A stretch of DNA of 63,210 bases, counting the filler, from Octopus bimaculoides (lineage: Eukaryota): the NCBI RefSeq assembly GCF_001194135.2. It is 6 parts of 5 records of this genome, joined end to end, with 100 filler letters (N's around TTAATTAATTAA, not from the genome) between each part and the next. Parts side by side here need not be neighbours in the genome. Positions count along the whole stretch, not along the records: positions 29,510 to 46,077 come from NW_026390724.1; 5 more parts are not named here. One strand, given 5' to 3'. How positions within the stretch are numbered: position 1 is the first letter of the stretch; each line of letters begins with the position of its first letter. Shown piece after piece: positions 29,510 through 46,077 of the stretch. The position numbers were made by a program, and so were the translations under genes. Below the pieces are notes generated by a model. The model saw nothing but the letters and a program-made list of their open reading frames with translations. It had not been told where the DNA came from and did not search any database.

Positions 29510-32500
29510 GTTTGTTCGTTCTTTCGTTCGTTTGTACGTACGGGCATAAGGTACGTTCCATCGATCGTTCGTACGTAAGTACGTACGTTCGTTTGTTCCT
29601 TATTTCGTACGTTCGTTCCTATGTACTTACGTTCGTTCGTACGTACGTAAGTACGTGCGTGCGTTCGTTCGATCGTTCATTCGTTCGTACTTACGTACGT
29701 TCGTTCTTACGTACGCAGGTACGTTCGTTCGTTCGTAAGTACGTACGTACATTCATTCGTTCGTTTGTACGTACTTACGTTCGTTCGTTCATTCATTAGC
29801 TCGTTCGTTCGTTCTTTTGTACTCTCGTTCGTTTGTTCGTACGTATGGACATAAAGTACGTTCTTTCGTTCGATCGTTCTTTTGTTCGCTCGTTCGTTCA
29901 ATCGCTCGTTTGTTCGATCGCTCGTTCGTCCGTACGTACGTAGGTACGTATCTTCGTTCGTTTGTACTTACGTACGTACCTACGTACGTTCTTTCGTTCG
30001 TTCGGTCGTACATACGTCCGTTCATTCGTTAGTTCGTTCTTTCATTCGTTCGTTCGCTCCATCGTTCGTACGTACGTACGAAAGATCGTTGGTTCCAATG
30101 TTCCTACGTACGTTCGTTCGGTCGTTCTTTAGTTCGTTCGTACGTACATACTTACGTTCGTTCGTACATACGTAAGTACGTACGTTTATTCATTCGTTCG
30201 TTCGTTTGTTCGTACGTACGTTCGTTCGTTCGTTCGTTCATCTTGTTCGTTCGCTCCTTCGTACGTTCGTTTGATCGTTCGTACTTAATGACTCATGTAC
30301 GTACGTTCGTTCGTTCTTTCATCCACCCTTACGTACGTTCGTTCGTACGTATGGACGTTCGTTCGTACGTACGCACGGACTATCGCTCGTTCGTTCGTGT
30401 GATCATTCTTACGTACGAACGTTCGTTCGATCGTTCTTACCTGCGAACGCTCGTTCATTCGTTATTTCGTCCGTACGCACCTTCGTTCGTTCGTGCGTCC
30501 AGACGTACGTACGTACAAACGTTCATTCGTTTGTACGTTCATTCGTTCGTAAGTTCGTTCGTTCATTCGTTCGTTCGATCATTCGGACGTACGTACGTTC
30601 GTTCGATATTTCGTGTCTACTTACATACGTACGTTCGTCCTTTCGTTCGTTCGATCATTCGTACGTACGTTCGTTCGTACGTACGTAAATATGTACGTAC
30701 GTTCTTTCGTTCGTTCGTACGTACGTACGCAGATACGTATCTTCATTCGTTTATACTTACGTACGTTCATTCGTTAGTTCGTTCGTTCGTTCGTACGTTC
30801 TTTCGTACGCTCGTTTGTTCGTTTGTTCGTTCGTTCCTTCCTTCGTACGTAGTACGTTTGTTCTTTCGTTCCTTCGTTCGTATGTACTTACGTTCGTCCG
30901 TCCGTTCGTTCGTTCTTTTGTTCGTTCGTACGTACGTACGTATGTGTGTTCGTTTGTTCGATCGTCCATACGTTCGTTCATTCGTTCGTCCTTTCGTTCT
31001 TACGTATGTACGTTAGTTGTTTCGTTGGTTCGTTCGTTCATTCGTTCGTACGTACGTTCGTTCGTTTGTACGTACGTTTGTTCGTTCGGTCGGTCGTTCG
31101 TATGGACATAAAGTACGTTCGTTCGTTCTTTTGTTCGTTCGTACGTACGTACGTTCGTTCGTTCGTTCCATCGCTCGTTCGTCCGTACGTACCTAGGTAC
31201 GTATCTTCGTTCGTTTGTACTCACGTACGTACGTTCTTTCGTTCGGTCGTACATACGTAAGTACGTCCGTTCATTCGTTAGTTCGTTCTTTCATTCGTTC
31301 GTTCGCTCCATCGTTCGTACGTACGTACGAAAGATCCTTCGTTTCAATGTTCCTACGTACGTTCGTCCTTTCGTTCGGTCGTTCGTTTGTTCGTTCTTTC
31401 GTTCGTTCGTACGTACATACTTACGTTCGTACGCATGTTCTTTCTTCCGTTCGTTCGTTCGTTCGTACATACGTACGTAAGTACGTACGTTTATTCATTC
31501 GTTCCTTCCTTCCTTCGTACGTACGTACGTTCGTTTGTTCGTACGTTCGTTCGTTCATCTTGTTCGTTCGCTCCTTCGTACGTACGTAAGTTCGTATGTT
31601 CGTACATTCGTTTGTTCGTTCGTACTTAATGACTCATGTACGTACGTTCGTTCGTTCTTTCATCCACCCTTACGTACGTTCGATCGTGCGTTCGTTCGTA
31701 CGTATGGACGTTCGTTCGTTCGTACGTACGTACGGACTATCGCTCATTCGTTCGTGTGTTCATTCTTACGTACGAACGTTCGTACTTTCGTTCGTTCGTT
31801 CGTTCTTTCGTTATTTCTTCCGTACGCACCTACGTTCGTTCGTGCGTCCAGACATACGTACGTACAAACGTTCGTTCGTTTGTTCGTTCATTCGTTCGAT
31901 CATTCGGACGTACCTACGTTCGTTCGATATTTCGTGTCTACTTACGTACGTTCGTCCTTTCGTTCGTTGGTTGGTTGGTTGGTTCATTCGTTCGTTCGTT
32001 CGTTCGATCATTCGTACGTACGTTCGTTCGTTTTTTCGTACGTACGTTCTTTCGTTCGTTCGTTCGTACGCAGGTACGTATCTTTGTTCGTTTAGACTTA
32101 CATACTTGCGTACGTTCATTCGTTAGTTCGTTCGTTCGTACGTACGTTCTTTCGTTCTTTTGTACGCTCCTTCGTTCGTTCGTTGTTTCGTTCGTTCGTT
32201 CGTTCGTTCGTTCGTTCGTATGTACTTACGTTCGTCCGTCCGTTCGTTCGTTCTTTTGTTCGTTCGTACGTACGTACGTACGTACGTGTGTTCGTTTGTT
32301 CGATCGTCCATACGTTCGTAAGTTCGTACTTACGTACGTTCGTTCATTCGTTCGTTCATTCGTTCTTACGTACGTATGTACGTTCGTTGTTTCGTTGGTT
32401 GGTTCGTTGTTTCGTTCGTTCGTTCGTACGTACGTTCGTTCGTACGTACATTCGTTCGTTCGTTTGTACGTACGTACGTTCGTTCGGTCGGTCGTTCGTA

Positions 32501-44500: not shown

Positions 44501-46077
44501 AACGAACGAACGAAAGAACGAAGGAACTAACGAACGAACGAACGTACGTATGTACGAACGACCGAAAGAGCGAACGTACGTAGGTACGTACAAACGAACG
44601 AAGGAATGTACGTACGTACGTACGAACGAACGAACCAACCAACGAAACAACGAAGGAACAAACGTCCGTACGTAAGAATGGACGGACGAACGAATGAACG
44701 AACGTACGCAAGTACGAACTTTCGAACGAATGAACGATCGAACAAACGAACTCACTGACGTATGTACGAACGAACAAACGGACGAACAAAAGAACGAACG
44801 GACGAACGAACAGACTAACGAACGAACGTAAGTAAGTACGTACGAACGAACGAACGAACGAAAGATCGAACAAGCGAACAAAAGAACGAACGTAGGTACA
44901 AACGAACGAACGAATGAACGAACGTACGTACGAATGAACGAACCAACAAGTGAATGAATGAACCTACGTACGTACGAACGAATGAACGATCGAATTAACG
45001 AAAGAAAGAACGAACGTACATTCGTATGTATGTACGTAGGAACGTACTATGTACGTAGGAACGTACGTATGTACGTACGTATGTACGTACGTATGTACAT
45101 ACGTATGTACGTACGTACGTATGTACGTACGTATGTACGTACGTATGTACATACGTATGTACGTACGTACGAACGTACGTACTTACGAACGAACGATCGA
45201 ACGAACCAACGAACGAAGGAAAGATCGAACGAACGTACTTACGAAAGAACGAACGTACTTACGAACGAACGAACGTACTGCCGAACGAACGAACGAATGA
45301 ACGAACATACGAATGACCGTTTGTACGTACTTACGTCCGGACGCAGGAACGAAAGTACGTACGAACGAAATAACGAACGAGCGAAACCAATGACCAAACG
45401 AATGTGCGCATGTACGTGCGAACGAACGAACGAATTAACGAACGAACGTACGTACCAACGTACGTACGAACGAACGAACGAACGAAAGAACGAACGAGCG
45501 TACAAAAGAACGGACGTTCGAACGAACGAACGAACGAACGAACGAACGAACGACCGAACGTACCTACGTACATTTTTACGTGAGTACGTACGTACGTACG
45601 AACAAAGACGAACGGACGAACGAACGTACGCACGAACGAACGAACGATCGAACGAACGTACCTTATGTCCGTACGTACGAACGATGGAACGTAACTTATG
45701 TCCGCACGATCGAACGAACGATCGAACGAACGAACGATCGAACGAACGATCGAACGAACGAACAAAAGAACGAAAGAACGAACGTCCGTACGTACGAACG
45801 AACGAAAGAACGAACCAGCGTACAAAAGAACGAACGTACGTACAAACGAACGAACGAATGAACGAACGAACGTAAGTACGAACGAACGAACGAATGAACG
45901 AACGAACGAACAAACGAACGAACGAACGTACGAACGTTTTTACGTAAGTACGTACGTACGAACGTTCGAACGAATGAACGATCCTTATGTCTGTACGTAG
46001 GTACGAACGACCGAACTAACTGACGACCGAAGGAACGACCGAACAAACGTACGTACGTACAAACGAACGAACTAATG
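29510..46077. repeat. 16.5-kb CpG-rich complex satellite of TTCG/TACG-family tetramers; TTCG-oriented to ~40309, CGAA-oriented after
   Basis: Continuous 4-nt-phased array with no internal Ns. Recurring landmarks include GGACATAAGGTACG, GATATTTCGTGTCTAC and CTTAATGACTCATG. The right arm carries the reverse complement (e.g. CGTACCTTATGTCC). Confidence 0.97.

What the first reader, a model, noticed from the sequence alone, without database searches (positions are those of the whole stretch)
29510..46077. 16.5-kb CpG-periodic complex satellite written in a tetramer alphabet
Seen: an uninterrupted array with a CpG roughly every 4 bp (TTCG, TACG, ATCG, GTCG), in a window that is otherwise AT-rich and CpG-poor. 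It is neither a pure microsatellite nor a fixed-unit satellite. Unique landmarks recur at irregular distances, e.g. GATATTTCGTGTCTAC near 30605, 31926, 33500, 34641, 35510, 37223 and 37610, and GGACATAA(G/A)GTACG and variants about 13 times in the left arm. (ACGT)n runs are self-complementary and alternate purine/pyrimidine, so they can form hairpins or cruciforms and possibly Z-DNA. Inference: this could be a heterochromatic, centromeric or subtelomeric satellite, or a dense methylation target. Its true location is unknown because spacers bound both ends.
Basis: partly seen in the sequence, partly recalled or inferred. Interest (0 to 1): 0.75.

Follow-up and report, generated by a model that had tools for sequence, protein, structure and literature searches.

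The report
CpG-rich tetranucleotide-derived satellite array
This 16.5-kb stretch is made entirely of decayed TTCG and TACG four-letter repeats, copied into larger blocks and flipped in orientation once; it is a real satellite DNA of a familiar kind, but its chromosomal place and role could not be tested here.

Summary
Across 29510-46077 there are 2712 CpGs (observed/expected 3.27). Of the CpG-to-CpG gaps, 64% are exactly 4 bp and 97% are multiples of 4. In-phase tetramers are 38% TTCG and 20.5% TACG.

New points:
- One clean polarity switch lies at about 40300-40311. The left arm is (TTCG/TACG)n and the right arm is the same family reverse-complemented.
- The array has nested higher-order duplications: about 1.25-1.57 kb units at 29.5-35.5 kb, about 365-397 bp units at 36.2-38.7 kb, and about 1.0-1.15 kb units that straddle the switch.
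- It is not a fold-back artefact. The inverted match (91%) is offset from the junction.
- It is non-coding, with no Rfam or Pfam match.
- No relative turned up in the metagenome, prokaryote-genome, viral or protein collections, or in the paper library.

Best reading: a satellite derived from a simple repeat, analogous to human HSat2/3. It was shaped by in-register slippage, point mutation, unequal exchange and one inversion.

CpG retention argues against heavy germline methylation. I file it as a new member of a known kind, of modest interest.

The parts
29510..40300 (+). Left arm: (TTCG/TACG)n lattice, T-rich polarity on the + strand. It runs to the left edge of the piece.
   Evidence: TRF period 4, 2675 copies, 70% matches. 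Each 250-bp bin holds 16-30 TTCG against 0-3 CGAA. 2551 in-phase tetramers cover 94.6% of the arm, with 50 phase breaks.
40311..46077 (-). Right arm: the same family in the opposite orientation, read as (CGAA/CGTA)n on +. It runs to the right edge of the piece.
   Evidence: TRF period 4, consensus CGAA. The AT skew flips from about -0.5 to +0.45. After reverse-complementing, its tetramer spectrum matches the left arm: TTCG 37.7%, TACG 20.4%.
40245..40330 (.). Polarity-switch junction. The left arm ends in core A', then (TACG)3-TACT-TACG-TAAA-(TACG)2-TAC, followed directly by CCGAAGGAACGAACG.
   Evidence: Sequence read directly. It is the only orientation change in the piece. As single-stranded DNA, 40225-40345 folds into a hairpin of about 90 nt, dG -36.7 kcal/mol, z -4.6.
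29510..35525 (+). Domain I: 4-5 tandem higher-order units of about 1.25-1.57 kb. Landmark order is A-D-E-F-B: A 29847/31104/32567/33828/35156; D 30080/31329/33108/34213; E 30284/31625/33440; F 30317/31658/34437; B 30605/31926/33500/34641/35510.
   Evidence: Paralogous blocks are 89-97% identical, for example 31232-31504 vs 34116-34388 at 93.9% and 32246-32373 vs 34964-35091 at 96.9%. Autocorrelation peaks near lag 1249. Tile scores are 190-267 against a baseline of 100-140.
36210..38713 (+). Domain II: three local two-copy tandem duplications of about 365-397 bp, at 36210-36806, 37164-37730 and 37988-38713.
   Evidence: K-mer diagonals at offsets 365-397. 37164-37343 vs 37551-37730 is 95.6% identical and 37988-38228 vs 38353-38598 is 94.7%.
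38901..40309 (+). Domain III, left member of the inverted pair. It consists of units of about 1.0 kb that abut the junction.
   Evidence: Aligned to the reverse complement of 41963-43453: 91.2% over 1236 columns, score 670, against 277-468 for other right-arm windows. Collinear inverted blocks are listed.
41963..43453 (-). Domain III, right member of the inverted pair. It is separated from the junction by 1.65 kb (40311-41962) of right-arm polarity.
   Evidence: The right arm also shows a direct period of about 1.15 kb (tile 41510 matches 42654-43089; tile 42710 matches 41582-41925).
39757..39855 (+). Representative copy of the family-wide conserved core of about 60 bp: CGTTCGTACGTAC-GGACATAAGGTACG-TTCKTTCGTTCGATCGTTCG. 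There are 21 copies across both arms.
   Evidence: Alignment A1 of 20 copies has 19 invariant and 29 near-invariant columns. 16 copies match within 1 mismatch, against 0.01 expected.
37627..37655 (.). Longest perfect (TACG)7 run, which contains a 28-bp perfect palindrome.
   Evidence: Hairpin dG is -13.1 kcal/mol, no better than shuffles (z -0.45).
45061..45171 (.). An uninterrupted 111-bp alternating purine/pyrimidine tract, built from 12-bp daughter units (TACGTACGTATG)n.
   Evidence: It folds as an imperfect hairpin, dG -48.8 kcal/mol, z -4.8. Watson-Crick symmetry is about 90%.
45608..45756 (-). Daughter minisatellite with a 33-bp period, 4.6 copies, carrying the core (…GGACATAAG…).
   Evidence: TRF. 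Core copies at 45657 and 45690 lie 33 bp apart.
40703..41049 (-). Daughter repeat with a 129-bp period, 2.7 copies. A nested 33-bp repeat lies at 40856-40932.
   Evidence: TRF.
41498..41560 (-). Daughter repeat with a 16-bp period (ACGAAAGAACCAACAG), about 4 copies.
   Evidence: Read directly; the repeat finder.

Best explanation
This is a non-coding satellite DNA array that grew out of a CpG-containing tetranucleotide repeat. The starting material is TTCG together with its one-step variant TACG.

Four processes shaped it:
- In-register replication slippage keeps the 4-bp lattice intact.
- Point substitutions create the variant 'letters' and a few unique landmarks.
- Unequal exchange or segmental tandem duplication copied blocks of about 0.37, 1.1 and 1.3 kb. 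These then drifted apart to 89-97% identity and changed length by further 4-bp-multiple slippage.
- One inversion or inverted duplication, placed in a self-complementary (TACG)n tract, turned the array head-to-head at about 40.3 kb.

Shown: the lattice, the nested duplications, the conserved core, the single polarity switch, and the lack of coding or known-RNA signal.

Inferred: the mutational mechanisms; that the array has no sequence-specific function beyond possibly packaging as repeat chromatin; and that it is not heavily methylated in the germline.
For: Lattice: 97% of CpG gaps are multiples of 4, and there are only 77 phase breaks in 16.5 kb.

Slippage in units of 4: among 91 strict paralogous alignments there are 662 substitutions against 51 gaps, and 4 bp is the commonest gap length. 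Ten of 15 differences in inter-landmark distance between domain-I copies are multiples of 4 (positions). Fourteen of 23 gaps in the inverted-pair alignment are multiples of 4.

Real duplications rather than low-complexity chance: the longest exact repeat is 79 bp, against 41-43 bp (maximum 50) in order-4 and order-8 Markov nulls. The landmarks recur in the same order A-D-E-F-B. Tile scores are 190-267 against a baseline of 100-140.

One family in both arms: the tetramer spectra are identical, and the conserved ~60-bp core occurs on + in the left arm and on - in the right arm.

Not a fold-back artefact: the diagonal symmetric about the junction shows only baseline identity of 71.5%. The specific inverted match is 91% and lies 1.65 kb off the junction.

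Non-coding: ORFs exist only because TTCG and TACG contain no stop codon in any frame. Pfam gives nothing above its cut-offs and Rfam gives nothing.

[quoted passage not shown] They derive from ancestral (CATTC)n, have kb-scale repeat units, and show reads matching both strands that were treated as possible inversion breakpoints (PMC4022460).
Against: The assembly, and the junction in particular, is therefore unverified.

The piece has no unique flanks, so copy number, chromosomal position and total array length are unknown. The source organism is unidentified.

'No function' is an inference from absence of evidence.

Retention of so many CpGs and of a ~60-bp core in 21 copies could also reflect constraint, such as a protein-binding site, rather than recent amplification.

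Variant counts are inflated by amplification, so the mutation-spectrum argument is only rough.
Confidence: 0.75

Rival explanations
1. It is a functional centromeric or pericentromeric satellite. Its dense short dyad symmetries (ACGT-based) would promote non-B DNA and help specify the centromere.
For: The array is long and homogeneous with higher-order units and a strand switch. Dyad symmetries are abundant: 51 perfect palindromes of at least 16 bp. Kasinathan and Henikoff report dyad symmetries under 10 bp in the centromeric satellites of many eukaryotes (PMC5889037, abstract seen). A ~60-bp core is conserved in 21 copies.
Against: There is no positional or chromatin evidence at all. The palindrome count is no higher than the motif composition predicts (order-3 Markov mean 70 against 51 observed). 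There is no nucleosome-sized monomer. Most satellites are not centromeric.
Confidence: 0.1
2. The array is real, but the polarity switch at about 40.3 kb is an assembly misjoin of two separate arrays of the same family, or a chimeric read.
For: The junction lies in low-complexity, self-complementary (TACG)n, where overlap-based assemblers can join strands wrongly. No reads could be examined.
Against: The ~1.0-1.15 kb subfamily is the same on both sides of the junction. The left 38.9-40.3 kb matches the inverted 41.96-43.45 kb at 91%, better than either matches the rest of its own arm. That fits a local inversion. It is not the perfect palindrome a fold-back read would give.
Confidence: 0.15
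3. The whole piece is a sequencing or base-calling artefact, or a contaminant contig.
For: TACG is the nucleotide flow order of 454 pyrosequencing (my own knowledge), and periodic junk reads do exist. No relative was found in any collection searched.
Against: Landmarks recur in order over 6 kb, and paralogous copies differ mainly by substitutions (662) rather than 1-bp indels (19). Phase breaks occur at only 0.46% per bp. Nested duplications have graded divergence of 89-97%. Noise does not produce these features. The collections searched hold essentially no animal genomes, so absence from them means little.
Confidence: 0.04
4. It is a densely methylated CpG target, silenced by 5mC.
For: CpG density is 16.4 per 100 bp, so any CpG methyltransferase would find many substrates. 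C-to-T and G-to-A variants at CpG are the commonest transitions.
Against: CpG observed/expected is 3.27, and about 72-75% of all C and G lie in CpG. CpG-transition variants exceed T-to-C variants only 3.1-fold (left arm) and 3.8-fold (right arm). That is far from the strong CpG decay seen in germline-methylated vertebrate repeats (my own knowledge). If the source is a cephalopod, octopus methylation is under 10% of CpGs and is absent from transposons (PMC9476566).
Confidence: 0.1
5. It is one copy of a dispersed simple repeat, or the expanded internal or tail microsatellite of a mobile element, rather than a satellite block.
For: Short TTCG or TACG microsatellites under 1 kb occur in other eukaryotic contigs (L026, L027). 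Some mollusc mobile elements carry tetranucleotide tracts (my own knowledge).
Against: The array is 16.5 kb without any CpG-free gap over 29 bp and with no element-like sequence or ORF domain. It runs to both edges of the piece. It has higher-order tandem structure.
Confidence: 0.07

Closest known systems
Human satellites 2 and 3 (HSat2/3), derived from ancestral (CATTC)n
   Same: Both are long arrays built from diverged copies of a short simple motif. Both lack a fixed monomer, have kb-scale repeat units of irregular length, and show strand-orientation switches. The motif contains TTCG/CGAA-type CpGs in HSat2 (PMC4022460).
   Different: The ancestral motif differs (4-bp TTCG/TACG against 5-bp CATTC), and there is no sequence homology. 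CpG density is far higher here (observed/expected 3.27). HSat2/3 are pericentromeric and methylated in normal human cells (my own knowledge). Position and methylation here are unknown.
Ordinary (AACG)n / (ACGT)n microsatellites, the RepeatMasker 'simple repeat' class
   Same: The same tetranucleotide motifs, and the same slippage in register.
   Different: Microsatellites are typically short and fairly pure. L026 and L027 carry tracts under 1 kb in CpG-depleted surroundings (observed/expected 0.69-0.70). Here the array is at least 16.5 kb and only 70% pure. It mixes two motifs at a 1.85:1 ratio and has unique landmarks and higher-order duplications.
Higher-order-repeat satellites such as primate alpha satellite
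   Same: Copies of the long unit are more alike (89-97%) than neighbouring short units (about 71%). The array is tandem and shows polarity inversions.
   Different: There is no monomer of about 170 bp. Unit length varies by hundreds of bp between copies, because the tetramer tracts keep expanding and contracting.
Decapod crustacean satellites built on tetranucleotides, with inverted repeats and alternating purine-pyrimidine tracts (hermit crab and land crab; D. Skinner's laboratory). Recalled from memory, not checked here.
   Same: Invertebrate satellites in which simple tetranucleotide tracts are interspersed with more complex conserved segments, and which have non-B DNA potential.
   Different: The motifs differ (TAGG/CCTA as I recall).
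CpG islands
   Same: Very high CpG observed/expected, implying escape from methylation-driven decay.
   Different: GC is 44.7%, below the usual 50% criterion. The sequence is periodic and repetitive, with no gene or promoter context, and spans 16.5 kb.

Membership tests
Pure microsatellite (simple sequence repeat) | Head-to-tail copies of one 1-6 bp motif at high purity | tested here: not met
   The period is 4 but matches are only 70%. Two co-dominant motifs are present, TTCG 38% and TACG 20.5%. The longest perfect run is 8 units.
Satellite DNA | Long tandem array (tens of kb or more) without interspersed unique sequence | tested here: met
   16.5 kb running to both edges of the piece, with no CpG-free gap over 29 bp. 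The true length is unknown.
Satellite DNA | High genomic copy number, clustered blocks, usually heterochromatic | not testable with these tools
There are no flanks and the organism is unidentified.
Higher-order-repeat satellite | Long units more similar to each other than the adjacent short units are | tested here: met
   Blocks at offsets of about 1.25-1.57 kb, 0.37-0.40 kb and 1.0-1.15 kb are 89-97% identical, against a 71-72% background. The longest exact repeat is 79 bp, against at most 50 bp in the nulls.
Higher-order-repeat satellite | A defined basic monomer of fixed length | tested here: not met
   Autocorrelation decays smoothly after the 4-bp period. Only a broad quasi-period of 32-60 bp appears in the TACG/TTCG alternation.
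Simple-repeat-derived complex satellite (HSat2/3-like class) | Dominated by diverged copies of one short ancestral motif, with irregular longer periodicities | tested here: met
   The class description comes from PMC4022460.
Simple-repeat-derived complex satellite (HSat2/3-like class) | Sequence homology to HSat2/3 itself | tested here: not met
   The motif is TTCG/TACG, not CATTC. The relation is analogy only.
Centromeric satellite | Association with centromeric histone or the primary constriction | not testable with these tools
   No chromatin or cytogenetic data are available.
Subtelomeric or telomere-associated repeat | Adjacency to telomeric repeats | tested here: inconclusive
   There is no TTAGGG or CCCTAA anywhere in the piece, but the piece has no flanks.
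Fold-back or palindromic assembly artefact | Near-identical arms symmetric about the junction | tested here: not met
   The symmetric diagonal shows baseline identity of 71.5%. The specific inverted match is 91% and is offset by 1.65 kb.
Protein-coding gene with a low-complexity repeat | Domain or homologue support beyond the repeat | tested here: not met
   Pfam gives nothing above its cut-offs. Protein-database hits are unrelated low-complexity look-alikes. ORFs are open in several frames on both strands.
Known structured RNA | Match to an Rfam covariance model | tested here: not met
   0 matches at gathering thresholds.

The most novel reading that the evidence does not exclude
The array is the centromeric, or major heterochromatic, satellite of an animal lineage whose centromere DNA has not been described, possibly a cephalopod. 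On this reading it is an unmethylated CpG lattice. Its ACGT dyad symmetries and conserved ~60-bp core (GGACATAAGGTACG…TTCGATCG) would act as the non-B-DNA or protein-binding feature that marks the locus.
Probability: 0.08. Interest if true: 0.6.

Novelty: new member of a known kind. Interest (0 to 1): 0.3.

Why it matters
If confirmed in reads, this would be a previously undescribed satellite family. No paper in the held library prints its motif combination.

It is unusually CpG-dense, which makes it a natural reporter of whether repeat DNA in this organism escapes germline methylation.

It gives a ready FISH or k-mer marker (the ~60-bp core) for a repeat block that assemblies probably leave unplaced.

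It is a clean worked example of how a tetranucleotide lattice gives rise to nested longer repeats of 12, 16, 33, 129, about 380 and about 1100-1300 bp.

On the practical side, the array is open in many reading frames (ORFs up to 633 aa), so it can seed false gene models.

It does not open a new mechanistic question by itself.

Tried and rejected
There is therefore no independent-read, RNA or copy-number evidence.
2. Rfam search: no match.
3. Exact-ORF look-ups for the 312-aa and 633-aa ORFs: not on record.
4. Metagenome scan for the core GGACATAARGTACGTTC: 25 single hits, none in a tetramer array, so all are chance.
5. Protein search with the 633-aa ORF found only unrelated low-complexity proteins. 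The best was a sea-anemone hypothetical protein at 49% over 28% of the query. Two of their contigs hold only sub-kb TTCG or TACG microsatellites without the landmarks. True family members would have outscored these hits in the first one.
6. Prokaryote-genome scan with a 21-mer core: one chance hit inside an ordinary bacterial coding sequence. Viral-contig scan of a generic 24-mer: 0 hits.
7. Eight literature searches found no description of a TTCG/TACG satellite, in cephalopods or elsewhere.
8. Fold-back palindrome: rejected.
9. Symmetric 'quasi-palindrome correction' at GTACTTACGTAAGTAC: rejected. The doubly substituted palindrome is rare, with 2 copies of CTTACGTAAG.
10. Extra palindrome enrichment beyond motif composition: rejected.
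11. Global pairwise alignment of units with cheap gaps was uninformative, because any two segments reach a baseline of about 85%. I replaced it with strict local alignments and scored baselines.

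
Full report
OBSERVATION

The piece 29510-46077 (16568 bp) is bounded by N and artificial linkers. It is 44.7% G+C and carries 2712 CpG dinucleotides, 3.27 times expectation. GC, GG, CC, AG, CT, TG and CA dinucleotides are all strongly depleted.

Of 2711 CpG-to-CpG intervals, 1740 are exactly 4 bp and 2633 (97%) are multiples of 4. 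Tandem Repeats Finder reports two period-4 arrays at 70% matches: 29510-40242 (consensus GTTC) and 40311-46072 (consensus CGAA).

I parsed the sequence into in-phase tetramers. The left arm gave TTCG 37.9%, TACG 20.7%, then TTCT, TTCA, TTTG, TTCC, ATCG and others at 1-4% each. The right arm, after reverse-complementing, has the same spectrum (TTCG 37.7%, TACG 20.4%). No CpG-free interval exceeds 29 bp, so nothing is inserted in the array.

GATATTTCGTGTCTAC occurs exactly at 30605, 31926, 33500, 34641, 35510, 37223 and 37610, with 0 expected in shuffles. GGACATAAGGTACG-like motifs occur 13 times in the left arm.

(a) Polarity. Every 250-bp bin left of 40260 has 16-30 TTCG and 0-3 CGAA. Every bin to the right has the reverse, and the AT skew flips sign. 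There is one clean switch. It lies in the sequence …(TACG)3 TACT TACG TAAA (TACG)2 TAC | CCGAAGGAACGAACG… at about 40300-40311.

(b) A family-wide core. The GGACATAAGGTACG landmark is the centre of a conserved segment of about 60 bp, CGTTCGTACGTAC-GGACATAAGGTACG-TTCKTTCGTTCGATCGTTCG. It is present 13 times on + in the left arm and 8 times on - in the right arm. In an alignment of 20 copies, 19 columns are invariant and 29 nearly so. Both arms therefore belong to one family.

(c) Nested higher-order duplications.
- Domain I (29.5-35.5 kb) holds 4-5 units of about 1.25-1.57 kb, with landmarks in the constant order A-D-E-F-B. Blocks are 89-97% identical, and an autocorrelation peak lies near lag 1249.
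- Domain II (36.2-38.7 kb) holds three local two-copy duplications of 365-397 bp at about 95% identity.
- Domain III (38.7-43.8 kb) is made of units of about 1.0-1.15 kb on both sides of the switch. Left 38901-40309 aligns to the reverse complement of 41963-43453 at 91.2% over 1236 columns. The score is 670, against 277-468 for other windows.
- Domain IV (43.8-46.1 kb) is less regular. It contains daughter repeats of 12 bp (an uninterrupted 111-bp alternating purine/pyrimidine tract at 45061-45171) and of 33 bp.
- Other daughter repeats of 16, 33 and 129 bp lie in the right arm.

These duplications are not low-complexity chance. The longest exact repeat in the left arm is 79 bp, against 41-43 bp (maximum 50) in order-4 and order-8 Markov simulations.

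HOW IT EVOLVES (INFERENCE FROM THE PATTERN)

Paralogous blocks differ by 662 substitutions and only 51 gaps, with 4 bp the most frequent gap length. Phase breaks number 77 in 16.5 kb.

Distances between the same landmarks in different domain-I copies differ by up to hundreds of bp, and 10 of 15 such differences are multiples of 4 (positions). Fourteen of 23 gaps in the inverted-pair alignment are multiples of 4.

This is the signature of in-register slippage acting on a tetranucleotide lattice. It is combined with point mutation, with block duplication by unequal exchange, and with one inversion.

The inversion sits in a (TACG)n tract. That tract is its own reverse complement, so it is a natural site for strand switching. 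This last point is inference.

ARTEFACT CHECKS

A fold-back or chimeric read would give near-identical arms symmetric about the junction. The symmetric diagonal shows only the 71.5% baseline, and the specific inverted match is 91% and offset by 1.65 kb.

Substitutions dominate over 1-bp indels, and divergence among the nested copies is graded. Both argue against base-calling noise.

A misjoin at the junction remains possible; I put it at about 0.15.

CODING AND RNA

Twenty-three ORFs of at least 150 aa, up to 633 aa, occur on both strands. They translate to FVRS/YVRT-type low-complexity strings, because TTCG and TACG contain no stop codon in any frame. Pfam gives nothing above its cut-offs and Rfam gives nothing.

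NON-B DNA

The piece has 51 perfect palindromes of at least 16 bp (longest 28 bp, at 37628) and 180 alternating purine/pyrimidine tracts of at least 12 bp. The junction region and 45055-45175 fold much better than shuffles, with z of -4.6 and -4.8.

However, an order-3 Markov model of the same sequence yields as many long palindromes (mean 70) as observed (51). The potential is real but is a by-product of the motif. It is not an added signal.

METHYLATION

CpG is retained at 3.27 times expectation. Variants produced by CpG transitions (TTTG + TTCA) total 194 in the left arm and 127 in the right. Variants produced by T-to-C (CTCG + TCCG) total 62 and 33. The excess is 3.1-fold and 3.8-fold.

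That is within the range of ordinary AT-biased mutation and far from strong methylation-driven decay (my own knowledge). The counts are inflated by amplification, so this is only indicative.

That fits the pattern seen here.

SEARCH FOR RELATIVES

- Metagenome contigs: only chance hits to the core.
- Prokaryote genomes: one chance hit inside a bacterial gene.
- Viral contigs: none.
- Protein database: only unrelated low-complexity proteins. Their contigs carry ordinary TTCG or TACG microsatellites under 1 kb in CpG-depleted DNA.
- Exact-ORF look-ups: none.
- Papers: none prints the TTCG/TACG motif combination. Cephalopod genome and repeat papers that I opened do not describe such a satellite.

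The organism therefore remains unidentified. The collections searched hold very little animal DNA, so absence from them is weak evidence.

COMPARISON WITH KNOWN KINDS

The closest well-described analogue is human HSat2/3. These are arrays of diverged copies of an ancestral simple motif (CATTC) with kb-scale units of irregular length. [quoted passage not shown]

The present array works the same way but is not a member. The motif differs, there is no homology, and CpG density is much higher. It fails the definition of a pure microsatellite and of a fixed-monomer satellite. It meets the criteria for a long tandem array with higher-order units. Centromeric, subtelomeric and heterochromatic status could not be tested.

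VERDICT

This is a real feature, correctly observed. It is best explained as a simple-repeat-derived, non-coding satellite (confidence 0.75), and it is a new member of a known kind. Interest is modest (0.3). The CpG density and the clean nested architecture are unusual and useful, but the mechanism is conventional and nothing points to a new function.

The most novel reading not excluded is a centromeric or major heterochromatic satellite built on an unmethylated CpG lattice (probability about 0.08).

Noticed in passing
window 36899-38800 (+), and 22 other ORFs of at least 150 aa across 29510-46077: The TTCG/TACG lattice contains no stop codon, so ORFs up to 633 aa (FVRS/YVRT repeats) are open on both strands. 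Gene callers could turn these into false proteins.
   Followed up: yes
P0001 (NCBI hypothetical protein QZH41_006452, Actinostola sp.), residues ~215-400: A sea-anemone gene model contains a run of about 180 aa of FVRS/FVPS/LRSS. The run looks like read-through of a TTCG-type microsatellite inside an otherwise normal protein, so the exon may be mis-annotated.
   Followed up: no
L026 ~10000-11000 and L027 ~10000-11000 (ENA metagenome assemblies ERZ25067868, ERZ25074195): These are eukaryote-like long contigs inside metagenome assemblies. Each carries a TTCG or TACG microsatellite under 1 kb in CpG-depleted DNA (observed/expected 0.69-0.70). L027 also holds a reverse-transcriptase ORF. They are unrelated to the window's family.
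   Followed up: partly
window, 20 sites, e.g. 39827-39834, 40290-40297, 40832-40839, 41410-41417: The palindromic octamer TTACGTAA occurs 20 times, mostly in the landmark TACTTACGTAAATAC next to the core. It resembles the PAR-bZIP / E4BP4 D-box type of site (my own knowledge). I found no evidence that this is more than a motif variant.
   Followed up: partly
window 31965-31990, 33543-33567, 41238-41262, 39755-39775: Short daughter microsatellites with a changed motif arise inside the lattice: (GTTG/TTGG)4-5, (CCAA)5 and (TTCC)3. This shows motif turnover by single substitutions followed by slippage.
   Followed up: no
window 45061-45171: An uninterrupted 111-bp alternating purine/pyrimidine tract built from (TACGTACGTATG)n. 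It is about four times longer than any other such tract in the piece and forms an imperfect hairpin of about 90% Watson-Crick symmetry.
   Followed up: yes
window 29510-46077, tetramer variants: G-to-T variants of TTCG (TTCT, 109 in the left arm) are as common as the CpG transitions (TTCA 102, TTTG 92). A pure deamination spectrum would not predict this. Amplification of TTCTTTCG units by slippage is the likely cause, but I did not test it.
   Followed up: no
L028 3228-3248 (MAG contig CAYTDF010000385.1): This is the single 21-mer hit to the core in prokaryote genomes. It lies in ordinary 55-60% GC bacterial coding sequence and is a chance match.
   Followed up: yes
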